IMG/VR virus record: IMGVR_UViG_3300035703_000008
Span: 124,001-188,000 of that record
Reading direction: 5' to 3' (one strand)
Length of the DNA: 64,000 nucleotides
The notes beneath the pieces were generated by a model. The model did no database searches, was not told the DNA's origin, and saw only the letters and a program-made list of their open reading frames with translations. The first letter of the stretch is position 1. Every line of letters starts with the position of its first letter. Shown one piece after another: positions 3,001 through 33,592 of this stretch. The translations under genes were made by a program, and so were the position numbers.

Positions 3001-5487
3001 GAAACCAAGAACCTCGTCCTGGATCTGGGTACCACCTACAGCATAGCCAAACAGGCGTGTTCCTGCGAATGTAGAGCTGGGATACACTGCTCGGTCGCCG
3101 TAGCTGACACCGTTGGCATCTTTGACGTCAAACAACGGAGCTTGATTCACCGAAGTTTTTTCCTGTGCTGGTAGCCATGTTACCCCGTCAAAGTAGAAAC
3201 TCTTGCCCTGGAGAGTGACTCCGTTGAGGGAGACCACAGTTTGATTGACGCGAGCCTCGCCGTCAAACACCGGAGTGAGATTGATCACTGGTTGCCGGAT
3301 CAAGGGAGGCTGGGTGTCAGGAGTGATAAAGCTCACTTCAAACACACGGTTGCGAACAGCTGGATCAATGTCGGCGGCAAAAATAACTCGTGTGCCAGCT
3401 ACGAACTGATAACCATCAACTCCATAACTGATGGCACCGTTGATGTTGGAAAAAGCATCGGTTTCGCGGAAATCAATGATGTCCACTGGCTCTTTGCCCC
3501 AGGTACCAAACTGATACATGGCCATGCTGGGACGGAATTCAATGATGGGACGTTTGGCTCGCAAGTTGTTGTCCAACACTGCCACTTGATTGTTGTACTC
3601 GGCCGTGGCATTGATCACATCGATGTGGAACCAGCGATTGCTGCGAGTCCATGCGTTGAGATCTCGGCTACCACGACTGATGGTGAGATAATCAGGATGT
3701 GTTGGCACGCTCAACGTGGCACTGTATGGTGTACGGATATAGGTCTCGGGAGTGACCAACCATGACACAGGGATCAATCTTATACCGTTGCCGTTGGCAG
3801 CACCAGGTTCGGCCACGGATGGCAGCGGTGCTTCTTCGGGCACGCCGGCACCGGGATTGGCCAAGCTGAGTTCTACTGTGTCATAGATGTACTGCTGGAA
3901 CACGTCTTCGCGATGCACTGATCCCGTGACTCGGCGACCTTGGTACCAGTGCCAGGGTCCAAAATAGGCTTCACCATCGATGAATCCCACCCGCACAGAC
4001 ACTCCTGGTCCAGTGCCCACACCTTCCACGTAGTACTCTTGATTTTGATAGGTGCTGGGATTGATGGATCCACGGAATACCACTTTGAGACCATTGGTAA
4101 ACTTGACTCCATTGGGGGCTGTGTAATCCTTGGCGCCGATGATGTCATCGATGTCGATGGTCTCGACCTTGTCTTGTTCGATGAGTCGAATCTGACCAAA
4201 AAGATCAGGGTTGGTGCTGTCCTGATACCATAAAGTATCTTGTATGGCTGTGAGCAAGGGCTGCTGCTCAAAGTATCCGTTGTTGTTTTTGTACCAAACT
4301 GTGCTGCTCCATGTAGAGCCAAACTGTGCTGTGACCTTGGAATCCACAGGCACGGGGCGCACGCTGGAGAGATGCATGTACTTTCGACCATCACCGTCGT
4401 CGAGATATTGTATCAGCCACACGCTGTAGCGCAGGTCAAGATCGTCGATGTTGGTGACTTGATCAAAAGGCACAGTGTCGAAGCTGCCGGACTGGCCGTT
4501 CAGCGAGTTCTGTCTTGGCAACGGATCAAACTGAGTGGTGATCTGCCAGCCACCAATACCAGGATCCACTGTGCGGTTGACAAAGATTATGGTGCGACCT
4601 TCGAGATTGGTGATACCGTCAATGCCTTTGGGATATGCGGCTTGGAAGTCAGACACATATACATTGTTGATGTCTGAGAATCTTATGGTATCTGACACTA
4701 GATCCACGTTACCAGCATCGACTAGAGTGTAGTAGAAATCTTGTGCTGTTTTCAAGGGCACATTGAAGATCACTGTGCCCGAGTCAGAGCCGTTGTTGCT
4801 GACACCTAGAACATCGCGACTGGAGATATTGGATCGTCCAGGCATGGTGCCTGCGGGCTGACCGGGACGATTGGGAGCAGCTTGTATCCAAAAGTCATTG
4901 CCGGGTTGATCGACCACGAATTCATAGTTGCCGCCGCGAACCAAGGTGATCACAGGATTGTTACCAGCCACGCCTGAGAATTGATAGGCCTTGACTTCGG
5001 CTGTGTCCACGCGAGTGACATCATAGACATCGGTGAGGGGAATATCAGTGCCGCTGACATCTACTGCATCGGGACCTTCAGGCAACCAATAATACTGGCT
5101 GTAGTTTACGAATTTGTCAAGGTCGCAGAATGGATCCCAGCTATAGTATTCGCTTTCCCAGAGACGATCTTGATTCAAGGTCTCTGCGCCCTGGAGGTCC
5201 AAGGCATCGATCATGCCGGGATAGGTTATGGCATCTGTGACCGTGTTGGTATCGGGTCGGAAGAATGCCACGCCGGGTTCGAGCTGATAGTTGTTGCGAG
5301 CGGCTGATATTTCTGTGACATACGAATCTGCGGGATTGATACCGGGACCCACCCGTCGACCCACATAGCCCTGTGTGCGTCGTAGATTGGGCTCTTGCGT
5401 GAGCTGGTCCAGCGTGGCTGCCAGGAACTTGCGATTGGTATCTGTACGAAAAATGTCAGGTAAGAGATCTACCGTTCGTCTTGCCAT
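1..5487 (-). CDS. Very large baseplate wedge/structural protein (gp7-like position), partial, runs off the window's left edge
   Basis: ATG at 5487 overlaps the gp6-like stop (TGATG). Begins MARRTVDLLPDIFRTDTNRKFLAATLDQLTQEP and is still in frame at base 1 (..GRVLVSGWL). Absent from the ORF track, consistent with no stop in the window. Confidence 0.8.
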   Translation of the reverse strand, partial: MARRTVDLLPDIFRTDTNRKFLAATLDQLTQEPNLRRTQGYVGRRVGPGINPADSYVTEISAARNNYQLEPGVAFFRPDTNTVTDAITYPGMIDALDLQGAETLNQDRLWESEYYSWDPFCDLDKFVNYSQYYWLPEGPDAVDVSGTDIPLTDVYDVTRVDTAEVKAYQFSGVAGNNPVITLVRGGNYEFVVDQPGNDFWIQAAPNRPGQPAGTMPGRSNISSRDVLGVSNNGSDSGTVIFNVPLKTAQDFYYTLVDAGNVDLVSDTIRFSDINNVYVSDFQAAYPKGIDGITNLEGRTIIFVNRTVDPGIGGWQITTQFDPLPRQNSLNGQSGSFDTVPFDQVTNIDDLDLRYSVWLIQYLDDGDGRKYMHLSSVRPVPVDSKVTAQFGSTWSSTVWYKNNNGYFEQQPLLTAIQDTLWYQDSTNPDLFGQIRLIEQDKVETIDIDDIIGAKDYTAPNGVKFTNGLKVVFRGSINPSTYQNQEYYVEGVGTGPGVSVRVGFIDGEAYFGPWHWYQGRRVTGSVHREDVFQQYIYDTVELSLANPGAGVPEEAPLPSVAEPGAANGNGIRLIPVSWLVTPETYIRTPYSATLSVPTHPDYLTISRGSRDLNAWTRSNRWFHIDVINATAEYNNQVAVLDNNLRAKRPIIEFRPSMAMYQFGTWGKEPVDIIDFRETDAFSNINGAISYGVDGYQFVAGTRVIFAADIDPAVRNRVFEVSFITPDTQPPLIRQPVINLTPVFDGEARVNQTVVSLNGVTLQGKSFYFDGVTWLPAQEKTSVNQAPLFDVKDANGVSYGDRAVYPSSTFAGTRLFGYAVGGTQIQDEVLGFALRYLNINNIGDILFTNYLYEDTFLYVRDNVSTEINISEGFVRQYFDRIRFSSQIGWQPAITENRSRQVFRFVFDGISLIFDVPPAPDSAVPVLQIFVDGAFVDPDEYTMTSTVTNTVVTFQDPPAVGTVIEAQLISNQASPSAYYQIPLNLENNPLNQDSAGFTLGTIRNHYNSIGQNLIDIQGPINGANNTRDLGNILRYGDNIVQHSSPLVLAGSFLRHRAYDIFSALRFNSQEYEKFKNIMLDLAGKGDFVNLTPTQVLDQVMTEIASAKTNMSPFYWSDMIPASETFTSTTYTYTPISTPTFDTQQVYDFTSSNYLGLLVYLNGRLLTKGYEYEVAVDAPNLTVTVPLTVGDVIVIREYATTYGSFVPNTPTKMGLYPAFRPQMFLDKTSTGSVMVIQGHDGSITRAFGDVRDQILLEFETRIFDNLKVATPVPLVESEVIPGRFRDTDYTLEEINQMLSTDFLSWVGWNKLDYTTQNYVATNEFTWNYSQSSDRISGELMPGAWRGIYLYFYDTERPNVTPWEMLGFSEEPDWWQNQYGPAPYTSGNLVLWDDLEQGLVRDPAGIYYLPRYARPGLTDVIPSDSEGNLLSPLNSVVGNYSLETMRRSWTFGDGGPVESSWRSSSSYPFSIMRLLALTKPAKFFSLFADRDRYQFEPDLGQWLWDRRYRLDAKNLAPLYGNGVSKASFMNWIIDYNRQTGSNSTSDLETVLANTGVRLCWRTAAFTDKKYLKIYTERSTPNSLNTSLLLPDESYQLLLYKNQAFERVTYSSVIVQKTDTGWAVLGYSTTRPYFEILVSQVAGPTRQITVGNQQVRVPTTYTDTVVRVPYGYVFTNETAVCDFLLSYGQLLTLQGLEFENQENGYVLNWNQMAQEFLYWSQQGWSEGSLINLNPSATRLTVTRPFAVAESIATPTPENLILNQNRLTLSQSNLVIDRLDNTFRVTSLTSDTINYIELRFTNYEHMIVLDDVSIFADLIYDPATGSRQGRVLVSGWL

Positions 5488-9047: not shown

Positions 9048-9422
9048 TTAGACGAAGCTGGCTCTGCGTGTTTCTTGATCGAAAAAGATAGCCAAGCGTT
9101 CAGCAGTGCTGCTGGACACTACCTGCACCTGCAGTTCAATGAGTATGCCATTGTCCTGGGGATACACTGTGGCATCTGTGACAAACAAGCGTGGGTCTTG
9201 ACCTACCACACGCTGCAGTTCTTGCAGTATGGCTCGTTCGGTGTCAGGAGTCTGATTCTCAAACACATAGCTCCAGATCACGGTGCCATATTCGGGACGC
9301 CCGGGCAGACTGCCTTGCTGTATGCTCAAGGCGTTGGCCAAGTCGCGTTTGATCAAGGCAAAATCCGTGAGCGTGAATTTCTTGAACTGATCTATGGTGT
9401 TGAAGCCGATGAATGTGGTCAT
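9048..9422 (-). CDS. Baseplate wedge subunit, gp25-like
   Basis: 124 aa; LIKRDL.NAL..QQGS..GRPEYGT.IW..VFE and DPR motifs of the GPW/gp25 family. Confidence 0.85.
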   Translation of the reverse strand: MTTFIGFNTIDQFKKFTLTDFALIKRDLANALSIQQGSLPGRPEYGTVIWSYVFENQTPDTERAILQELQRVVGQDPRLFVTDATVYPQDNGILIELQVQVVSSSTAERLAIFFDQETRRASFV

Positions 9423-9426
9423 GCTT

Positions 9427-9434
9427 TATTTATA
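9427..9434 (-). promoter_or_regulatory. Late promoter TATAAATA, 4 nt before ATG
   Basis: Full T4 late consensus on the minus strand. Confidence 0.75.
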
Positions 9435-25976: not shown

Positions 25977-27230
25977 ATGAACGTTGACAAAAGCACTTTC
26001 TGTGCTGCTCCTTGGTTCCAAATCAAAAATACCACGCTTGGAAGTTACTGTAGCTGTTGCGAGATAGACCACGACAAAAGCACTTTCTCGGGCAACAAAG
26101 ATTTCGCTTGGCCCACGCATCTACCATCGCACTGGAACAACAGCGATTATGCTCGATACCTTAGGTCTGAGCTCACCAATGGTGTGCGTCTCCCCGAATG
26201 TCACAAGTGTTGGAGCAAAGAAGATGCTGGACAACAAAGTCTTCGACAAACTATCAATGACACCGTGGCTGGCAATCGACCTTTTGAATCTAGTTGGATG
26301 CAATCCTACTTTAGAAAAAAGCAAGATTACGAACATGATTTACTTTTGGCTGCCGATGTACAGGTCACCAATCTTTGCAACTTTGGCTGTGTGATGTGTG
26401 AGCCGGGTAGCAGCAGCCATCTCTATCGAAGATGGCGGAGAGATCAGGACCATCCGTTGATAAAAAAACAGTTGATGATCTTCCCCAACGGCTATCTTGA
26501 TCAGGTGAAAGAAACATACATCAACAGAAACAACTACGAGCTACTGCAACACGTGATAGATCAATCTCCGCGGTACTTGAAGATCATAGGCGGTGAGCCT
26601 TTGTTGGATCAGCAGTTGATGTCTGTGTTGTGCAATCAGCTTCCCGAAGTCAAATCAAAAATCAAACTTTACATCACTACCAATGGGAGCCAAGATCTCT
26701 GCCACGCACAACAACGGTTGTCGGGTTACCAGGAAATTTTTTGGGTAGTCAGTCTAGAGTCCACGGGCAAACTGCAGGACTATGTGAGAAAAGGCAGCGT
26801 ATGGTCCGAGATCGAGCACAACATTGACAGGTTTGTAAGCGAACACAGCAGTCAACACCTTTACATAGCCTATGTGATACAGAGTCTCACATTGGCTGGG
26901 CTGCCAACATTGTTGGAATGGGCCCAGCAACGCAACATTCCAGTGGCTACCAGTTTGCTGGCCAAACCTGAATTCATGGATGTTAGATCGTTGCCCACGG
27001 AGATGAAATCAAAGTTGATTGATCAATTGTCGCAGGCAACAAAGTATTCGATACCGCTGGAGATACAAAATCCAGCATCTGTCAATATTGCAGGGTTGTG
27101 CGAGCTCATCGGGCGCACCCAGTACGATAGATCTGCCATGTTGGATCTACGAGAGTGGTTGGATTGGTACGATCCCGACCAGCAATGGCGAGACATCATT
27201 CCCGAGTGGGCACCATATTTCTCGGAGTAA
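25977..27230 (+). CDS. Radical SAM protein with N-terminal SPASM/twitch-like Cys cluster
   Basis: FCAAPW..CSCC..ECHKCW..E, NLCNFGCVMC, GGEP, TTNG. Confidence 0.85.
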   Translation: MNVDKSTFCAAPWFQIKNTTLGSYCSCCEIDHDKSTFSGNKDFAWPTHLPSHWNNSDYARYLRSELTNGVRLPECHKCWSKEDAGQQSLRQTINDTVAGNRPFESSWMQSYFRKKQDYEHDLLLAADVQVTNLCNFGCVMCEPGSSSHLYRRWRRDQDHPLIKKQLMIFPNGYLDQVKETYINRNNYELLQHVIDQSPRYLKIIGGEPLLDQQLMSVLCNQLPEVKSKIKLYITTNGSQDLCHAQQRLSGYQEIFWVVSLESTGKLQDYVRKGSVWSEIEHNIDRFVSEHSSQHLYIAYVIQSLTLAGLPTLLEWAQQRNIPVATSLLAKPEFMDVRSLPTEMKSKLIDQLSQATKYSIPLEIQNPASVNIAGLCELIGRTQYDRSAMLDLREWLDWYDPDQQWRDIIPEWAPYFSE

Positions 27231-27755
27231 TCAGTCATAGTCAACGAGACTGACCAGCGCGATACCTTGCTCGGTGACACGGCGTCGACCAGGCAAGAAA
27301 TCTAGATTGGCGATCACGCCGGCTGCGAGATGATCCACGGCAAAGTGTTGTCTCAAGATTGATGCCACAGCCAGCACGGTACCGCCAGTGGCGATCACGT
27401 CATCGACGATGAAAGGACGATCGCCGATCTGCGCTGATTGTTGAATTTCAATGGTGTCTGAGCTGTATTCAGTGTCGTAATCGGCTGAATATACAGCTCC
27501 GGGTAACTTGCCTTTTTTGCGAGCCAGCACCAAGGGAAATCCGTGTGTGCGTGCCAGGATAGCACCCATGACGAACCCACGGCTTTCAACAGCCACGATG
27601 CTGGTAGCACGATGTGCTTTCACATATTTTGACATCTCGGTGCAGCAATGATCCAGCACATGTGGCGTGTTGAACACTTGATTGAGATCGAGGAAATCAA
27701 CACCTTTTTTTGGCCAGTCTTTTACTGTGAGTATGTTGTCTCTGATGTTGATCAT
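27231..27755 (-). CDS. apt: Adenine phosphoribosyltransferase
   Basis: DWPKKGVDFLD, ESRGF, ARKKGKLPG, EYS, PRPP-binding IVDDVIATGGT; start placed at the ATG overlapping the upstream stop. Confidence 0.9.
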   Translation of the reverse strand: MINIRDNILTVKDWPKKGVDFLDLNQVFNTPHVLDHCCTEMSKYVKAHRATSIVAVESRGFVMGAILARTHGFPLVLARKKGKLPGAVYSADYDTEYSSDTIEIQQSAQIGDRPFIVDDVIATGGTVLAVASILRQHFAVDHLAAGVIANLDFLPGRRRVTEQGIALVSLVDYD

Positions 27756-28084
27756 AGTTGGTCGGGCCAATCTCTGAAAAGTGCATGCTGGATGTCACCG
27801 GCAACAAACTGGTTGAAACTTTTGTGTTTGGTCTCGAGCTCGCCTTCTTGTGGCACCACTCTGCGGAAAGCATCATCCATTTGGGCCATGTTTTTGAACT
27901 CCATGAGGATCATCCATTCGGGCATGTCTGCGATTGAGCGGAAGCCCATCTTGCAGCGTGTGATACGATAACTTTCCATCCGTCCTTCAGAGACCAAATG
28001 ATCAAAGAAACTACGCATGCCGTTGACCCAGTCCAGGTCAGATATGTCGCCTTCTTTGTTGGCCCATATAGTGTAAAGATCCAT
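27752..28084 (-). CDS. DUF6614-like small ferredoxin-fold protein
   Basis: MDLYTIW..., YRITRCKMGF, EW.I.MEF..MAQMDDAF, ALFRDWPD pattern recalled from DUF6614 proteins. Confidence 0.55.
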   Translation of the reverse strand: MDLYTIWANKEGDISDLDWVNGMRSFFDHLVSEGRMESYRITRCKMGFRSIADMPEWMILMEFKNMAQMDDAFRRVVPQEGELETKHKSFNQFVAGDIQHALFRDWPDQL

Positions 28085-29014: not shown

Positions 29015-29254
29015 TTAGAAAAACGGCAGTCCTGATTTTTTAGTGGTATCGAGATTTTCCTTGATGATACCATTGACTATGTCGCGATCGCTCCAGCTCA
29101 TCTGCATGGCTTCGCTGATAGTGACGCCTCCGCGCATGAACCAACACAATTTCAGCGTCTCGGTCTTGATCGCTTTGGCCTCCTTTTCCAGTCGTTCTAT
29201 GTACTTGACCACGCCCGCGGGGTCTAGGATCAGGAGGCGGCTTCGAAAAAATTT
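29015..29254 (-). CDS. gp51-like baseplate/tail assembly chaperone ORF, probably reached by -1 frameshift from the gp26-like gene
   Basis: -1 frame open through the slippery site; LCWFMRGG.T..EAM.MS..DR..IIKENL.TTKKSGLPFF; no convincing SD/start of its own. Confidence 0.65.
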   Translation of the reverse strand, partial: KFFRSRLLILDPAGVVKYIERLEKEAKAIKTETLKLCWFMRGGVTISEAMQMSWSDRDIVNGIIKENLDTTKKSGLPFF

Positions 29255-30066
29255 GCCATGTCCAGGGTAAACTGTTGCTGGTACTCGTTGCTGCAAGCGG
29301 TACACTTCATCTTGAGCGGTTTCAGCTCGCCGGTTTCTTTCACGGCCACGATGTGATCTCGGATCTTGGCAAACATCTTGCGATCACAGTTGGCCAACCA
29401 TTCGGCGATGTGCTCGGGATCCTCGACCTGTGCTGCAGGAGTCTGCACCAATCTGATGTTTTGTGCCAGAGCTTGGGTAGTGATCTCAGTGATCTTTTTC
29501 AGCATGGCTCCCATCTGTGCCAGTCGCTGCTGATCTTCCATGTCAGCAGCACCAAGGGCCTGCAGGGTCTTTTGTTCTTCAAACTGGCGCATGCTGTTTT
29601 CATTGATCTGGCGATAGGTCATGGGCCGGAAATACAGCTTGAGATCGCCCAGTTCCAGGAATTCGTCGTAGTCGGGCCGGCCAATGTTTTCCAGGATCTG
29701 ACGCAGGTCCAGGGCGTAATCTTCTTCGTTTTCGCATTTGGGACAGCGTGTGGTGATCTCCATCTCATGACCGTAAGTGGCGATGCGTATGGCCGTGATC
29801 ACGGTGTCGATGTCCATGCTGGGCATTTTCCAAGCATCTCGGATGTTGGGCACACAGCTTTGGATCACCGACGGCACCGCTGATCCGTTGAACAGGGCAT
29901 CAGGTGTGCGATAAGTGATCTCGTCCAGGGTGGTCATGGGCATCACGGGATATTCGCCGTTGGCAGTGGGTTCCAACGCGCCTTCGGGATAGTAACGGCC
30001 ATCGCTGGGCAGGCGGATATAGATCGCCGGTTGGCGGAAATACTGCTTGAGTGGGTTGTTTGGCAT
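29230..30066 (-). CDS. Baseplate hub assembly protein, T4 gp26-like
   Basis: NPLKQYFRQP..YI.LPS.G, MT..DEI, D.D...AIRIATYG, CPKC and CTAC zinc motifs, ends NFFEAAS; start placed at ATG 30066. Confidence 0.8.
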   Translation of the reverse strand: MPNNPLKQYFRQPAIYIRLPSDGRYYPEGALEPTANGEYPVMPMTTLDEITYRTPDALFNGSAVPSVIQSCVPNIRDAWKMPSMDIDTVITAIRIATYGHEMEITTRCPKCENEEDYALDLRQILENIGRPDYDEFLELGDLKLYFRPMTYRQINENSMRQFEEQKTLQALGAADMEDQQRLAQMGAMLKKITEITTQALAQNIRLVQTPAAQVEDPEHIAEWLANCDRKMFAKIRDHIVAVKETGELKPLKMKCTACSNEYQQQFTLDMANFFEAAS

Positions 30067-30081: not shown

Positions 30082-30108
30082 TAAATAAGATGCAGCGAAA
30101 TATTTATA
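30082..30108. promoter_or_regulatory. Face-to-face late promoters: TAAATA (+, 30082-30087) and TATAAATA (-, 30101-30108)
   Basis: Motifs read directly in the 55-nt gap between divergent genes. Confidence 0.65.
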
Positions 30109-30121
30109 GGCCAAAAACTCT

Positions 30122-33100
30122 GTGGATCAAGAACTAGCACTTTTAATTGAACAACTGCGCGAGCTGACCCCGGCTCTGCGCAGCATGGGCGAGACCCAGG
30201 CCACGGCTTATACACGAGCCTCGGACCGCTTTGTGGCCAGCATGGCCAAAGTCGTGGCCAGCATGGAGAAAAGCAATCAAACACGGGCCCAGCAACAGCG
30301 AGCCACAGAAAAGTTCATTCGCGAAGTAGAAAAAGCCGCTGATGCCACCGAAGAATATCGCCAAGAACAAGAACGCCTGGCCCGTGAGCAAGAAGATGCT
30401 GCACGCGCCGCCGAAGAGCTGGCAGGTTCTCTAGATAGAGCCAGCCGCGCCAGCGATGCCGATCGAAATCGTGCAGCACTGCGCATGATGCGAGATCAGC
30501 GTCGTGCTCAATTTGATGATCAGAGAGAAGTTACCGCGGGTCGGCTGTTTGACGAATTTGGCCGTGGTACCACTCTCATGGGTGCCGCACGCGAGGGCCT
30601 TGAGAATCTTGGAGGCACCAGCATTGGTGCCACAGCAGGCCTACGCTTGTTCACTGCTGGTATAGAAGGTGCAGGCAAGGCCCTGCTCAGCTATGCCAAG
30701 GCCATGTACGACGGGGAACAAGGCGCGGCTGTTGCGGCCAAATCTGTGAAAGAATTCGCGGATACGGTCAGTAACGCGGCCATGGCCATTGGCACAGCCA
30801 TGATGTTGATCCCGAAGTTGGGCATAGCCGCTCGCGTCGCTGGCGCGGCCGTGACGGCACTTGGCGGTGCAGCCAAACTTGGCGCCGAAGCCACAAAACT
30901 CGCGGCCGAACAAAGCGATCGTCTCTACAAAAACTATCAGGTTCTCGGAAAATCCGGTGTGACCGCAGCCGATGGCATGATGGGCTTGGCCGAAGATGCG
31001 CAGCGTTTGGGTTATGGACTCAACGATGTTGATCTTGCTGCATTCCAGCAGACCCTGGGTGGTGCCAGCAAAGATCTAGCCATGCTGTCAGGTTCGGCCG
31101 TGGACGGACGCCGGAGCTTTGCTCGGTTTTCGGGCGATATAACACGCAGCGAGCTTGGCGAATACTTCATGAATCTTGGCATGAGCGTGGACGAGATCAA
31201 CGCAGGCACAGCAGGATTCGTCAAGCAACAGGTCAATCTTGGTCGTGCGCAAGGCATGACACAGGCACAGCTGACGCAAGGTGCTGTCAAGTATCTCAAA
31301 GAACTGGATGTGCTGACCAAGCTCACGGGCATGCAAAAGCAAGAGCTTGAAGCGCAGATGGATTCCAACCGCAGGAACGAGAGATTCCGCGCAGCCATCG
31401 AAAAAGTGCGGGCCGAGCAAGGTGACGAAGCTGCTAGAAATCTCGAAATGAACATGGCCGTGGCCTCAGAGCGATTCCCTGGTCTGGCCAAAGGTCTCAT
31501 GGATATCTCGGCGGGATTCGTCAACACCGAAGAAGCACAAAAAGTATTCCGCGCTGGCATGCAAGACGTGCCCATGCTGATGACCAAAGGACTGGGATCG
31601 GGCTTCCAGGAAATGGGGCAAGCCGCACAGAGAACCACAGATGCATTCGGGCATTTGGCAGCCGTGGGTGCCTACGGTGATGTGTTTGGCGACTATTATG
31701 AAAGCATGAAGGCCGCGGGCATGAGCAACGAGGATGCTGCCAAGCGTGCCCTAGAGTTGGCCGAGATACAGAAAAAACAAGGTGAAGGCGCTGACGCTGC
31801 TACCAAAGCACAGACTGAACTGCGACGCAGCCAGATGAACGCCAGGGACGACCTGCAAAACATGGTCAAAACTGGTGTGGTGTCTGCCACCAACGGCCTG
31901 AATTCGTTTGGAAAAGCCGCAGAAACCGTGGCCGATTCCATACGCAAGATGTTTGGCATCAAGACACCGGCATCAGAATTCAAAGGGCAAGTTGATCCAG
32001 AGCAGGTGAAAAAATCCCAGGAACAACTGGAGCTGGCCAAGAAGCGCAGTGAACTGGCTGACAAAAACCTAGCAGCAGCACGAGCTGAACTCGAAGAATT
32101 ACAAAAGCAAAATGCCAGTTTTAGAAAAACGCGAGAAGCAAGGATCCGTGTATTCAAAGCACAGGAAGAACAGAGTCGCGCCCAGACTGCTCTAGCTGGT
32201 GCTACAAAAAGAGCCAGAGCAGCGGCACCGGCTGCTCAAGGAGCTCCAGGAGCTCCATCAGCTGGAGGAACTCCCTCACTCGGCACAACACCAGCACTTG
32301 GTACACCGTCTACTACACCGGCCACCGCCCCAAGCACTACCTCCCCAACCACTGGTGCAACACCTGCCGGAGGCCAGGACACAGCTGGAGCTACCGCTCC
32401 AACCAGCGACCTAGTACCCAAGCTGCTGGACTTTATTGGAAAAATAGAATCTCGCAACAACTACAACGTGTTAGTGGGAGGAAAAACCAAATCTGATCCA
32501 GCTCTCACAGACATGACCGTGGCACAGGTGCAAGAATTCCAGAGCAAGATGCTGGGCATGGGCCGAGAAAGCACAGCAGTGGGCAAATATCAGATCATCA
32601 GAAAAACCCTGGCTGGACTGATAGAAGAGGGAGTGGTCAAACCTTCGGACAAGTTTGATGCCGCTACCCAAGACAAGCTGGCCATAGCCTTGCTGGAACG
32701 TCGTGGGCTCAGAGACTATCAGTCGGGCAAGATCAAACCCAACACGTTTGCCGACAACCTTGCCATGGAGTGGGCCAGTTTGCCTATGTCCAACAATCGC
32801 AGCTACTATGCTGACATTGGCAGCAACAAGAGCGGTGTTGATCGTGACGCTGTCATGCAAGTGATCGCTGCAGCCAAAGGTGGAGTAGCACAAGGGCCCA
32901 AGCTAGGGTATCCAGCTGTGCTACACGGTACCGAAGCTGTGGTACCTTTGCCTGATGGCAAACACATTCCAGTTGACATCAAAAACTTTGATATTCGAAA
33001 GATCATAGATTCTATGATGACTAAAAAATCCCGCGCATTGGGATTTGACAACAAGAATATCTCAGTTGATATCAAAAACTTTGATGTACAAAAAATCATG

Positions 33101-33592
33101 GATACCATGATGACCAAGTGGATGGATCCATCAGCTGTGCGACAACTACAGGGCAAGGACCGTGGGGATAAGTCAATAGAATCCAGCTTTGCCTATCTCA
33201 TGGACAACTACGGAAAAGAGTCAAAGAATCTTGATCGTATCACAGAGTCGTTGTCCACGATGTTTGCTAGCATGCAAGATCGAGTGCTGCCAGAGATATC
33301 AAACTTAAAAGACAGCGTGTTTACTTCTATCGCAGACATGCGATCTCGTGAAATCGCAACCACGGGCACAGCCATCGATGATCAATTCTTGCAAGAACTG
33401 CGGGCAGTGAACAGAGAACTGCCCACAGCAGTAGAACGTGCGGTACGAACAGCCATGACTGACACACAACGGGCACAAGCTGATGTATCTGCGGCTGTGA
33501 AATCCCTGATCCCCGAACTGCAAACACAGACACAGGTCTTGCAACGTCAGACATCAGTGAGCGAGCGTATATTACAGGCAGCACAAAACTAG
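30122..33592 (+). CDS. Tape measure-like protein with C-terminal lysozyme-like domain
   Basis: 1156 aa, Ala/Gly-rich helical; IESRNNYN...TAVGKYQII...FD...QD.LA..L...EWASLP muramidase motifs; LHGTEAVVPL. Confidence 0.75.
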   Translation: MDQELALLIEQLRELTPALRSMGETQATAYTRASDRFVASMAKVVASMEKSNQTRAQQQRATEKFIREVEKAADATEEYRQEQERLAREQEDAARAAEELAGSLDRASRASDADRNRAALRMMRDQRRAQFDDQREVTAGRLFDEFGRGTTLMGAAREGLENLGGTSIGATAGLRLFTAGIEGAGKALLSYAKAMYDGEQGAAVAAKSVKEFADTVSNAAMAIGTAMMLIPKLGIAARVAGAAVTALGGAAKLGAEATKLAAEQSDRLYKNYQVLGKSGVTAADGMMGLAEDAQRLGYGLNDVDLAAFQQTLGGASKDLAMLSGSAVDGRRSFARFSGDITRSELGEYFMNLGMSVDEINAGTAGFVKQQVNLGRAQGMTQAQLTQGAVKYLKELDVLTKLTGMQKQELEAQMDSNRRNERFRAAIEKVRAEQGDEAARNLEMNMAVASERFPGLAKGLMDISAGFVNTEEAQKVFRAGMQDVPMLMTKGLGSGFQEMGQAAQRTTDAFGHLAAVGAYGDVFGDYYESMKAAGMSNEDAAKRALELAEIQKKQGEGADAATKAQTELRRSQMNARDDLQNMVKTGVVSATNGLNSFGKAAETVADSIRKMFGIKTPASEFKGQVDPEQVKKSQEQLELAKKRSELADKNLAAARAELEELQKQNASFRKTREARIRVFKAQEEQSRAQTALAGATKRARAAAPAAQGAPGAPSAGGTPSLGTTPALGTPSTTPATAPSTTSPTTGATPAGGQDTAGATAPTSDLVPKLLDFIGKIESRNNYNVLVGGKTKSDPALTDMTVAQVQEFQSKMLGMGRESTAVGKYQIIRKTLAGLIEEGVVKPSDKFDAATQDKLAIALLERRGLRDYQSGKIKPNTFADNLAMEWASLPMSNNRSYYADIGSNKSGVDRDAVMQVIAAAKGGVAQGPKLGYPAVLHGTEAVVPLPDGKHIPVDIKNFDIRKIIDSMMTKKSRALGFDNKNISVDIKNFDVQKIMDTMMTKWMDPSAVRQLQGKDRGDKSIESSFAYLMDNYGKESKNLDRITESLSTMFASMQDRVLPEISNLKDSVFTSIADMRSREIATTGTAIDDQFLQELRAVNRELPTAVERAVRTAMTDTQRAQADVSAAVKSLIPELQTQTQVLQRQTSVSERILQAAQN

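What the first reader, a model, noticed from the sequence alone, without database searches (positions are those of the whole stretch)
29015..29260. Probable -1 programmed frameshift fusing gp26-like and gp51-like ORFs (lambda G/GT-style chaperone pair in a T4-like phage)
Seen: gp26-like ends ATG GCA AAT TTT TTC GAA GCC GCC TCC TGA, with two overlapping in-phase X XXY YYZ heptamers (A AAT TTT and T TTT TTC; 29254-29245). The -1 frame reads on as FRSRLLILDPAGVVKYIERLEKEAK...KKSGLPFF to 29015 and has no clear SD/start of its own. The pair is divergently adjacent to the tape measure gene. Known: lambda gpG/gpGT tail chaperones arise by -1 frameshift beside the tape measure gene, whereas T4 genes 26 and 51 are described as separate genes. 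Inference: gp26/gp51 here are the G/GT equivalent, giving ~278-aa and ~350-aa products.
Basis: partly seen in the sequence, partly recalled or inferred. Interest (0 to 1): 0.8.

Follow-up and report, generated by a model that had tools for sequence, protein, structure and literature searches.

The report
Conserved frameshift in phage hub-chaperone gene
A jumbo phage's gp26-like baseplate-hub gene carries an invariant slippery site (T TTT TTC) that very probably lets some ribosomes slip back one base and add a 76-residue tail, so that one gene makes both a gp26-like and a gp51-like hub-assembly chaperone; the same device is conserved in marine cyanophages and other jumbo phages.

Summary
The gp26-like gene (30066..29230, minus strand) ends AAT TTT TTC GAA GCC GCC TCC TGA. 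The -1 frame stays open from the heptamer to 29015.

The -1 frameshift reading is strongly supported by comparison. The in-frame xxT TTT TTC is invariant in 74/74 distinct relatives of the window and in 74/74 distinct cyanomyovirus contigs. It is also present, as T TTT TTC or T TTT TTT, in the isolates Phosso, Atu_ph07, 121Q, RaK2, PA5oct, RsoM2USA, a Vibrio jumbo phage, Stenotrophomonas CM1, S-BM1 and Aeh1. The codon before it changes amino acid but always ends in T. The codon periodicity of substitutions switches from the 0 frame to the -1 frame exactly at the heptamer. The -1 peptide (FFRxRLL...) is conserved even where no start codon exists.

T4 gp26 and gp51 are paralogues (both PF12322). 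gp51 has an extra C-terminal domain (Gp51_C) that the -1 extension probably matches. The 278-aa product therefore corresponds to gp26 and the 350-aa product to gp51.

This parallels lambda G/GT, but the protein does not belong to any known tail-chaperone family. No description was found in the searchable literature. Nothing was tested experimentally. Only T TTT TTC is conserved, not A AAT TTT.

The parts
29230..30066 (-). gp26-like baseplate-hub assembly gene, 0-frame product 278 aa (ATG 30066, TGA 29232-29230)
   Evidence: PF12322 T4_baseplate E=4e-16 and phrog_150. The N-terminus MxxNPL aligns with homologues. AF2 model pLDDT 88.7. 4228 homologues, nearly all about 278 aa.
29245..29251 (-). 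Conserved slippery heptamer T TTT TTC (0-frame codons AAT TTT TTC), the proposed -1 tandem-slippage site
   Evidence: Invariant in 74/74 distinct window-clade loci and in 74/74 distinct cyanomyovirus loci. Present as T TTT TTC in Phosso, Atu_ph07, 121Q, RaK2, PA5oct, Vibrio 2.275.O, S-BM1 and Aeh1, and as T TTT TTT in RsoM2USA and CM1. The wobble T of the preceding, variable codon is always kept.
29248..29254 (-). Second overlapping heptamer A AAT TTT, specific to the window and its AAT subgroup
   Evidence: The preceding codon is AAT in only 19 of 76 relatives and AGT in 47, so this heptamer is not conserved.
29015..29251 (-). -1 frame extension: 78 codons counted from the heptamer plus the stop TAA 29017-29015. 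It adds 76 residues after Phe274, giving a 350-aa product. Helical, Gp51_C-like domain.
   Evidence: Exactly 78 aa from the heptamer in nearly all relatives, with the conserved motifs FFRxRLL, CWYMRGG and ETTKKSGLPFF. Coding periodicity in the -1 frame starts at the heptamer, and there are 0/69 stops. AF2 pLDDT 89.8, four helices. hhalign against the T4-like gp51 C-terminus gives E=2.2e-5, probability 76%. The ESM Atlas returns 'putative Gp51' / PF28602 clusters at score 0.91.
29230..29244 (-). Dual-coding overlap: 0 frame reads E-A-A-S-stop, -1 frame reads R-S-R-L-L
   Evidence: The second position of the first 0-frame codon varies freely (E/G/A/V), which is the Arg wobble in the -1 frame. 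The wobble C of the third 0-frame codon GCC is near-invariant, being the first base of a Leu codon in the -1 frame. The stop varies TGA/TAG/TAA, which are synonymous Leu codons in the -1 frame.
29178..29238 (-). Possible stimulatory stem in the window: GCCUCCU (29238-29232) pairs with AGGAGGC (29184-29178). It starts 6 nt after the heptamer.
   Evidence: Present in the MFE fold of the window. Across 35 relatives 80% of cells pair, against 42-62% for slid controls, but two central pairs are broken in about half the sequences, and RNAalifold finds no consensus structure. Inconclusive.
29210..29212 (-). GTG used by gene callers as the start of a 65-aa stand-alone ORF (rival start)
   Evidence: P0121 is 65 aa. 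This GTG is not conserved in relatives, and it lies downstream of conserved coding sequence.
30101..30108 (-). T4-type late promoter motif TATAAATA, about 35 nt upstream of the gp26-like ATG
   Evidence: One of only two occurrences in the 64 kb window, against 0.46 expected. The consensus is from my own knowledge of T4 late promoters.
30122..33592 (+). Divergent 1156-aa neighbour, a putative tape-measure/hub protein with a lysozyme-like segment
   Evidence: phrog_430 matches residues 798-894. Weak homology to the syntenic PA5oct virion protein (1e-8), and to 121Q gp597 and RaK2 ORF088. The RaK2 depositors call ORF088 tape-measure-like. No significant similarity to T4 gp29.

Best explanation
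The gp26-like gene is decoded in two ways. Most ribosomes read AAU UUU UUC GAA GCC GCC UCC and stop at UGA, giving a 278-aa protein that corresponds to T4 gp26.

A fraction of ribosomes, with tRNA-Phe on UUU in the P site and on UUC in the A site, slip one base back on U UUU UUC. They re-pair with UUU UUU and continue in the -1 frame (CGA AGC CGC CUC CUG ...). They pass the 0-frame stop and terminate at 29015, giving a 350-aa protein made of gp26 residues 1-274 plus a 76-residue helical domain.

This long form has the architecture of T4 gp51, that is PF12322 plus Gp51_C. The single gene therefore supplies both hub-assembly chaperones, which T4 encodes as two paralogous genes. This is functionally parallel to the lambda G/GT pair.

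Shown here: the anatomy of the site; the conservation of the heptamer at synonymous sites; the switch of coding frame; the absence of a conserved start; the paralogy of T4 gp26 and gp51. Inferred: that slippage is ribosomal and actually occurs; its efficiency; the homology of the window's extension to Gp51_C (probable); the chaperone role.
For: 1. Heptamer conservation. TTTTTTCG is invariant in 74/74 distinct relatives that share 50-68% protein identity with the window. The preceding codon is AGT, AAT, CAT, ACT, CGT or GAT, always ending in T. Elsewhere in these genes Phe is 64% TTT and NNY codons are 54% T. Other conserved Phe residues use both codons: the DALFNG motif has TTC 50 and TTT 7.

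2. Frame switch. Upstream of the heptamer, substitutions peak at 0-frame third positions (mean entropy 1.41). Between the 0-frame stop and the first conserved Met they peak at -1 frame third positions (1.61, against 0.88 at second positions). 0/69 sequences have a -1 frame stop in the 20 codons after the heptamer, against 69/69 and 65/69 in the other two frames.

3. No conserved start. 20 of 76 relatives have no ATG, GTG or TTG between the heptamer and codon 21. Five have a -1 frame stop directly in front of the heptamer. Yet residues 3-20 (RxRLL.LDSDQISK..) are conserved.

4. Phylogenetic depth. The same site and a homologous -1 ORF occur in Phosso, Atu_ph07, 121Q, RaK2, PA5oct, RsoM2USA, Vibrio 2.275.O and Stenotrophomonas CM1. 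They also occur in 74/74 distinct cyanomyovirus contigs plus S-BM1, where the preceding codon is AGT, TCT, GCT, GGT or AAT, and in Aeh1.

5. Rosetta-stone support. T4 gp26 and gp51 are both PF12322. gp51 homologues carry an extra PF28602 domain. Cyanophage -1 domain against the gp51 C-terminus: hhalign probability 95.5%, E=1.4e-8. Jumbo-phage -1 domain against the gp51 C-terminus: 76%, E=2.2e-5. The Aeh1 -1 ORF is hit by the gp51 C-terminus HMM at 4e-6.

6. Anticorrelation. T4 and Aeromonas phage 25 have a full-length gp51 and no heptamer in gp26; T4 reads GAG TTC TTT GAG.

7. Literature context. PMC3037559 notes that cyanophage gp51 is only about 20% of the T4 length and is 'missing' in Aeh1, with no explanation. 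PMC3004832 lists gp26 and gp51 as hub assembly chaperones.

8. Termination pattern. Among the 150 best cluster representatives none carries an in-frame C-terminal fusion; matches run to within about a dozen residues of the protein's C-terminus.
Against: There is no experimental evidence: no junction peptide, reporter assay or ribosome profiling.

No conserved downstream stimulatory RNA structure was found.

U UUU UUC is not among the classic high-efficiency bacterial heptamers (own knowledge), although U-rich sites are used in phage tail genes.

In Phosso, Atu_ph07 and 121Q an ATG overlaps the gp26 stop (ATGA or TAATG), so the small protein could also be made separately there.

In a pf16-like phage, in Listeria phage LIS04 and in an uncultured 484-kb phage the small ORF has its own ATG and there is no X XXY YYZ site. 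The extension can therefore exist as a free protein.

Homology of the window clade's extension to Gp51_C is weak when that clade is tested alone (hhalign 25%, E=7.5e-4).
Confidence: 0.85

Rival explanations
1. No recoding occurs. The small ORF is an ordinary separate gene, translated from its own start (in the window GTG 29212 or a non-canonical codon) or by termination-reinitiation coupled to the gp26 stop. On this view the T-run is conserved only because gp26 needs a C-terminal Phe-Phe.
For: FF is conserved at protein level even in T4 gp26, which ends ..EFFELL. Gene callers predict stand-alone ORFs of 58-72 aa. Phosso, Atu_ph07 and 121Q have ATGA or TAATG overlaps. Cygsa01, LIS04 and LR756508 have separately initiated small ORFs.
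Against: A need for FF does not explain the invariant choice TTT TTC, nor the invariant wobble T of a preceding codon whose amino acid varies. T4 encodes the same FF as TTC TTT. Coding periodicity and residue conservation in the -1 frame begin at the heptamer, upstream of any start codon in 20 of 76 relatives, and in five of them directly after a -1 frame stop. The candidate starts are not conserved in position.
Confidence: 0.06
2. The frame change is made at the RNA level. RNA polymerase stutters on the T6 run and adds one U to some transcripts, and these encode the fusion in a single frame.
For: The conserved element is a homopolymer run of six T, extended by the conserved wobble T. RsoM2USA has T9 and CM1 has T7, lengths at which slippage becomes more plausible (own knowledge of transcriptional slippage in bacteria and IS elements). 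The protein outcome would be identical, so the comparative data cannot fully separate the two mechanisms.
Against: Runs of six are generally too short for efficient polymerase slippage, which becomes appreciable at about 8-9 or more (own knowledge). The run is capped at six in about 150 distinct sequences instead of drifting longer. Part of that cap is explained by the Arg codon CGN that starts at the C. The run always sits in exact X XXY YYZ phase.
Confidence: 0.07
3. The heptamer is a chance feature and the -1 ORF is not expressed.
For: In-phase slippery heptamers do occur by chance in single sequences.
Against: Invariance across about 150 distinct sequences and more than ten isolates from distant clades. 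Constant length of 78 aa. Protein-level conservation. A confident AF2 fold for the extension.
Confidence: 0.01

Closest known systems
Lambda gpG/gpGT, and P2 gpE/gpE+E', tail assembly chaperones made by -1 programmed frameshifting (Xu, Hendrix & Duda 2004; cited from my own knowledge and from the reference list seen)
   Same: Two products share an N-terminus. The slippery heptamer lies a few codons before the short form's stop. No obligatory downstream structure is evident. The extension is a small domain. The gene is associated with the tape-measure gene. The T4 homologues are assembly chaperones, and gp51 is absent from the particle. In Listeria phage LIS04 the PF12322 gene sits exactly between the tail tube and tape measure genes. 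P2 also uses a U-rich heptamer (own knowledge).
   Different: The protein family and fold are unrelated: PF12322, about 280 aa with a 4-Cys motif, and no hit to TAC families or to PDB chains. In the window the gene is divergent from, not upstream of, the tape-measure-like gene. The T4 genetics concern the baseplate hub rather than the tail tube. Binding to the tape measure is untested.
T4 gp26 and gp51 (baseplate hub assembly chaperones, both Pfam PF12322; gp51 additionally Gp51_C, PF28602)
   Same: The 0-frame product is a gp26 homologue. It ends at the same FF motif, and T4 gp26 ends FFELL, which resembles the trans-frame FFRxRLL. The frameshift product reproduces the two-domain architecture of gp51.
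   Different: T4 uses two separate, divergently transcribed paralogous genes and has no slippery site (TTC TTT). The window's extension is longer, 76 against about 50 residues. It is only probably homologous to Gp51_C (hhalign 25-76%).
Short 'gp51' (T4-GC_12) ORFs of cyanomyoviruses
   Same: They occupy the same position after gp26, lie in the same -1 frame and follow the same T TTT TTC site. The annotated ORF of about 31 aa in S-BM1 is the tail of the -1 extension.
   Different: They belong to a different sequence subfamily, which is clearly Gp51_C (E=1.4e-8). The 0-frame stop comes one codon after the heptamer instead of four. They have been treated in the literature as truncated stand-alone genes (PMC3037559).

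Membership tests
-1 programmed ribosomal frameshift site (tandem slippage) | X XXY YYZ heptamer in phase with the upstream frame | tested here: met
   AAT TTT TTC gives T TTT TTC in 0-frame phase at 29251-29245.
-1 programmed ribosomal frameshift site (tandem slippage) | Heptamer conserved at synonymous positions among relatives | tested here: met
   74/74 and 74/74 distinct sequences in two clades, plus more than ten isolates. The preceding codon varies but always ends in T.
-1 programmed ribosomal frameshift site (tandem slippage) | -1 frame open and under protein-coding constraint from the site onward, without its own conserved start | tested here: met
   The periodicity switches at the heptamer. 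0/69 sequences have a stop. 20 of 76 have no start before codon 21. Five have a -1 stop directly upstream.
-1 programmed ribosomal frameshift site (tandem slippage) | Downstream stimulatory structure or upstream SD-like stimulator | tested here: inconclusive
   The window has a 7-bp stem 6 nt downstream. There is no consensus structure in 35 relatives. 80% of cells pair, against 42-62% in slid controls.
-1 programmed ribosomal frameshift site (tandem slippage) | Trans-frame protein demonstrated | not testable with these tools
Tail assembly chaperone pair (lambda G/GT type) | Short and long forms sharing an N-terminus through a -1 shift near the 3' end of the short ORF | tested here: met
   Inferred from comparative data: 278 and 350 aa, with the shift 4 codons before the stop.
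Tail assembly chaperone pair (lambda G/GT type) | Gene located between the tail tube and tape measure genes, on the same strand | tested here: not met
   In the window the gene is divergent from the 1156-aa tape-measure-like gene. The feature is met in the relative LIS04, where the order is sheath, tube, PF12322 gene, tape measure.
Tail assembly chaperone pair (lambda G/GT type) | Sequence or fold membership in known TAC families | tested here: not met
   Pfam returns only PF12322. The PDB profile search finds nothing significant. Foldseek against the PDB finds no hit with E below 0.4. BFVD hits are all gp26/gp51-type.
Tail assembly chaperone pair (lambda G/GT type) | Binds the tape measure protein, needed for assembly, absent from virions | not testable with these tools
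   Only literature on the T4 homologues is available: gp26 and gp51 are listed as hub assembly chaperones, and gp51 is not in the particle (PMC3004832).
PF12322 T4_baseplate (gp26/gp51) | Profile match above the curated cut-off | tested here: met
   59.8 bits against a cut-off of 24.5, E=4e-16. T4 gp26 and gp51 both match.
Gp51_C (PF28602) | Profile match of the -1 extension to the C-terminal domain of gp51 | tested here: inconclusive
   This Pfam model is not in the local library. Local hhalign gives: all jumbo-phage extensions against the gp51 C-terminus 76%, E=2.2e-5; the window clade alone 25%, E=7.5e-4; the cyanophage extension 95.5%, E=1.4e-8. ESM Atlas score is 0.91 to PF28602 clusters. 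A jumbo-phage HMM does not reach T4 gp51 (E=0.16).

The most novel reading that the evidence does not exclude
The gp26/gp51 family is the T4-superfamily and jumbo-phage counterpart of the G/GT tail assembly chaperones. The ancestral state would be one gene with a -1 frameshift, kept today by cyanomyoviruses, Aeh1 and RaK2-, PA5oct- and Atu_ph07-type jumbo phages. The T-even lineage would have replaced recoding by gene duplication, hard-wiring the long form as gene 51 and keeping the short form as gene 26. This would extend the 'universal' tail-chaperone frameshift to the phage group long regarded as the exception. It would also explain why cyanophage gp51 looks truncated and why Aeh1 seems to lack it.
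Probability: 0.5. Interest if true: 0.85.

Novelty: new variant of a known kind. Interest (0 to 1): 0.75.

Why it matters
If true, one of the most widespread structural gene modules in the ocean and in jumbo phages is mis-annotated. The gp26-like family alone has more than 4000 clusters at 90% identity. At present the long form is missing from annotations. The extension is either left unannotated (RaK2, PA5oct, Aeh1) or called as a truncated ORF of 31-72 aa.

The model gives a concrete explanation for a published oddity: cyanophage gp51 is about 20% of the T4 length, and gp51 is 'absent' from Aeh1.

It links the poorly understood T4 hub chaperones gp26 and gp51 into a single short-form/long-form system. 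It also makes their stoichiometry and mechanism testable with simple heptamer mutants in cultured phages. Finally, it offers a clean natural example of recoding and gene duplication as alternative ways to make the same protein pair.

Tried and rejected
- Pfam and PHROGs on the small ORF gave no family.
- BLASTP of the small ORF, and of the 121Q and S-BM1 extensions, against T4 gp51 gave nothing significant. Only profile methods see the relation.
- A PDB sequence-profile search and Foldseek against the PDB, for both AF2 models, gave no meaningful hits. No structural link to tail assembly chaperones could be made.
- RNAalifold on 35 relatives found no conserved downstream structure.
- I looked for natural in-frame fusions in the window's clade. 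P0075 (349 aa) turned out to be an N-terminal extension. None of the 150 best representatives has a C-terminal fusion.
- The 1156-aa neighbour against T4 gp29 showed no similarity.
- The cyanophage gene after gp26/'gp51' matches an 'endolysin' PHROG, not a tape measure. Tape-measure adjacency is therefore not claimed for cyanophages.
- There is no second PF12322 paralogue in the window.
- Nine literature searches found no description of this frameshift. The library lacks most subscription journals, so earlier reports cannot be excluded.
As a result read laying was not used, and the test for transcriptional slippage could not be run.
Its two pieces were analysed separately.
Full report
**What is there.**
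On the minus strand the window carries a 278-aa gene (ATG 30066, TGA 29232-29230). It is a clear relative of T4 gp26 (Pfam PF12322 T4_baseplate, E=4e-16; phrog_150 'baseplate hub'). It ends GAC ATG GCA AAT TTT TTC GAA GCC GCC TCC TGA. The -1 frame is open from 29305 to 29015 and reads ..FFRSRLLILDPAGVVKYIERLEKEAK...KKSGLPFF.

The window is 100% identical to part of a 209-kb IMG/VR contig. Its closest cultured relatives are jumbo phages at 27-34% protein identity: Sinorhizobium Phosso, Agrobacterium Atu_ph07, and the E. coli 121Q, RaK2 and PA5oct types.

The neighbourhood is a T4-like structural module:
- gp6-like wedge, gp5-like hub and gp25-like genes upstream;
- gp46/47-like nuclease genes;
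- a divergent 1156-aa protein with a lysozyme-like segment;
- then gp20 portal, gp21 protease and gp23 capsid genes.

A T4-type late promoter motif, TATAAATA, lies about 35 nt upstream of the gp26-like start. It is one of only two copies in 64 kb.

**The heptamer is conserved at the nucleotide level.**
I fetched 87 IMG/VR loci with a relative of the gene. All 87, and the three isolates first fetched, have xxT TTT TTC in phase near the 3' end. Among 74 distinct full-length junctions the eight bases TTTTTTCG are invariant.

The codon in front changes its amino acid: AGT 47, AAT 19, CAT 3, ACT 3, CGT 3, GAT 1. It always ends in T. Elsewhere in the same genes Phe is 64% TTT and NNY codons are 54% T. 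Other conserved Phe residues use both codons; for example the DALFNG motif has TTC 50 and TTT 7.

**The reading frame switches at the heptamer.**
Upstream of it, variation peaks at third positions of the gp26 frame (mean entropy 1.41). From the first base after TTTTTTCG onward, variation peaks at third positions of the -1 frame. Between the 0-frame stop and the first conserved Met the mean is 1.61, against 0.88 at second positions.

In the short overlap the pattern is telling:
- The second base of the first 0-frame codon varies freely (E/G/A/V). It is the wobble of an invariant Arg codon in the -1 frame.
- The wobble C of the 0-frame GCC is almost fixed. It is the first base of a Leu codon in the -1 frame.
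- The stop varies among TGA, TAG and TAA, which are synonymous Leu codons in the -1 frame.

None of 69 sequences has a -1 frame stop in the 20 codons after the heptamer. In the other two frames 69/69 and 65/69 do. Counted from the heptamer, the -1 peptide is exactly 78 residues in nearly every relative. It begins FFRxRLL.

**No conserved start codon.**
In 20 of 76 distinct relatives there is no ATG, GTG or TTG between the heptamer and codon 21. In five, a -1 frame stop sits directly in front of the heptamer. Residues 3-20 are nevertheless conserved.

The window itself has Leu where most relatives have Met21. The aligned ATG of Phosso and Atu_ph07 is AGC in the window. Gene callers therefore choose assorted starts, giving ORFs of 58-72 aa.

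**Depth of conservation.**
The same site and a homologous -1 ORF occur in PA5oct, RaK2, Vibrio phage 2.275.O, RsoM2USA (T TTT TTT inside a T9 run) and Stenotrophomonas CM1 (T TTT TTT). The extension is unannotated in RaK2 and PA5oct, and it is truncated to 40 aa in Atu_ph07.

It also occurs in cyanomyoviruses. S-BM1 and all 74 distinct related contigs have xxT TTT TTC, one more codon, a stop, and a -1 ORF of 62-70 aa starting FFR. The preceding codon there is AGT, TCT, GCT, GGT or AAT. The 31-aa 'gp51' annotated in S-BM1 is the tail of this ORF.

Aeromonas phage Aeh1 has GAT TTT TTC GAC TGA and an unannotated -1 ORF.

**Relation to T4 gp26 and gp51.**
T4 gp26 and gp51 both match PF12322 over their full lengths, so they are paralogues. 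All gp51 homologues carry a second precomputed domain, PF28602, which the ESM Atlas names Gp51_C.

T4 gp26 ends ..EFFELL, encoded GAG TTC TTT GAG, which is not slippery. It is followed by gene 25. T4 gp51 continues past the equivalent point as ..VFKLLVNPDEIF..MIPAERGFVLKLIEKDKQ.

Profile comparisons gave:

| Query | Target | Result |
|---|---|---|
| cyanophage -1 domain | T4-like gp51 C-terminus | hhalign 95.5%, E=1.4e-8 |
| all jumbo-phage -1 domains | T4-like gp51 C-terminus | hhalign 76%, E=2.2e-5 |
| window clade alone | T4-like gp51 C-terminus | hhalign 25%, E=7.5e-4 |
| gp51 C-terminus HMM | Aeh1 -1 ORF | 4e-6 |
| cyanophage HMM | Aeh1 -1 ORF | 1.7e-10 |

The ESM Atlas returns 'putative Gp51' / PF28602 clusters for the window's extension at score 0.91.

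The frameshift product therefore has the gp51 architecture and the unshifted product the gp26 architecture. This is certain for cyanophages and Aeh1, and probable for the window.

Phages with a full-length gp51 (T4, Aeromonas phage 25) lack the heptamer in gp26.

A tree of the PF12322 domains places T-even gp26 and gp51 as sisters with moderate support (85/78). They sit inside a group with Aeh1 and the cyanophages. The jumbo phages form a separate, well-supported clade. This fits a duplication in the T-even lineage, but the support is moderate and the root is arbitrary.

**Literature.**
The T4 tail review lists gp26 and gp51 as hub assembly chaperones and says gp51 is not in the particle (PMC3004832). 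Sullivan et al. 2010 noted that cyanophage gp51 is about 20% of the length of T4 gp51 and lacks the first ~200 residues. They also noted that Aeh1 lacks gp51, and they do not mention frameshifting (PMC3037559). Nine full-text searches found no description of recoding in gp26 or PF12322. The library omits most subscription journals.

**Comparison with G/GT.**
The logic is the same:
- short and long chaperone forms;
- a shift site a few codons before the stop;
- a small added domain;
- no obligatory RNA structure;
- proximity to a tape-measure-like gene.

In Listeria phage LIS04 the PF12322 gene lies exactly between the tail tube and tape measure genes. But the fold is different. AF2 models of both pieces are confident (pLDDT 88.7 and 89.8). 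Neither matches any PDB chain. BFVD hits are only gp26/gp51-type proteins of many myoviruses. I therefore file this as 'works like G/GT' and not as 'is a TAC family member'.

**Rivals and limits.**
- *Separate initiation.* It cannot be the whole story, for the reasons above. It may co-exist with the shift. Phosso, Atu_ph07 and 121Q have an ATG overlapping the stop. In a pf16-like phage, LIS04 and an uncultured 484-kb phage the small ORF has its own ATG and there is no X XXY YYZ heptamer (LIS04 still carries a T6 run).
- *Transcriptional slippage on the T6 run.* It would give the same protein and cannot be excluded from sequence alone.
- *Stimulatory structure.* No conserved one was found. A GC-rich 7-bp stem 6 nt downstream exists in the window and in part of its clade.
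- *Efficiency and function.* Both are untested.

Noticed in passing
window 30101-30108 (-) and 9427-9434 (-): TATAAATA, the T4 late-promoter consensus (own knowledge), occurs only twice in 64 kb against 0.46 expected. One copy lies about 35 nt upstream of the gp26-like ATG. The other lies just upstream of a gp25-like ORF (tblastn hit to T4 gp25 at 9111-9353).
   Followed up: partly
L099 (Listeria phage LIS04) 2486-3445: The gene order is sheath, tube, PF12322 'baseplate hub', 230 unannotated bases, tape measure. That is the classic tail-chaperone position. A homologue of the small domain lies in the +1 frame, with an ATG 8 codons before the stop and a T6 run (GAG TTT TTT AGT) that is not in X XXY YYZ form. 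A jumbo-phage HMM hits it at E=3e-4.
   Followed up: partly
L181 (Aeromonas phage Aeh1) 2195-2378: Aeh1 is reported in the literature as the only T4-like phage lacking gp51. It has GAT TTT TTC GAC TGA at the end of gp26 and an unannotated 60-aa -1 ORF. The gp51 C-terminus and cyanophage HMMs hit that ORF at 4e-6 and 1.7e-10.
   Followed up: yes
L093 (RaK2) 3349-3714, L092 (PA5oct) 3349-3573, L002 (Atu_ph07) 3822-4058: The -1 extension is not annotated at all in RaK2 and PA5oct. In Atu_ph07 it is represented only by a 40-aa CDS that starts at an internal Met.
   Followed up: yes
L094 (RsoM2USA) and L096 (Stenotrophomonas CM1), gp26-like 3' ends: These two have T TTT TTT instead of T TTT TTC, with T-runs of 9 and 7. 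In CM1 the 0 frame runs 10 more codons after the site. Longer runs make transcriptional slippage more plausible there.
   Followed up: no
L182 (Pseudomonas phage Cygsa01) 1795-1982 and L098 (uncultured 484-kb phage LR756508): In these lineages the heptamer is absent (..AGC ATT TTC ACC TAA TG and ..AAC TTT CTA TTC..). The small ORF has its own ATG, in the -1 frame with a TAATG overlap in Cygsa01 and in the +1 frame in LR756508. The extension domain can therefore apparently work as a free protein.
   Followed up: partly
L100-L179 (cyanomyovirus contigs), 10-14 nt upstream of the heptamer: A conserved GAG GGN or GAA GGN (Glu-Gly) puts an SD-like GAGG or AGGA about 10 nt upstream of the slippery site. 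That is the spacing of the dnaX frameshift stimulator (own knowledge). It may be coincidental to the coding.
   Followed up: no
window 29230-30066 (-), protein residues 108, 111, 255, 258: Four nearly invariant Cys residues (CxxC ... CxxC) suggest a zinc-ribbon-like site in the gp26-like protein. One homologue is named 'ribosomal protein S27E' by JGI.
   Followed up: no
window 25977-27230 (+) and 27231-27770 (-): Close to the tail genes there is a radical-SAM-domain protein (phrog_14086). Next to it is a 179-aa ORF with a PRPP-binding-type motif (VDDVIATGGT, recognised by eye only).
   Followed up: no
BFVD hits of the gp26-like model: The gp26/gp51 fold is predicted in many other myovirus groups, usually as uncharacterised proteins of 200-690 aa. 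They include phiKZ-like jumbo phages, Campylobacter CP220, phiRSL1, an Ackermannviridae 'cysteine-rich protein' and Bacillus BCD7.
   Followed up: no
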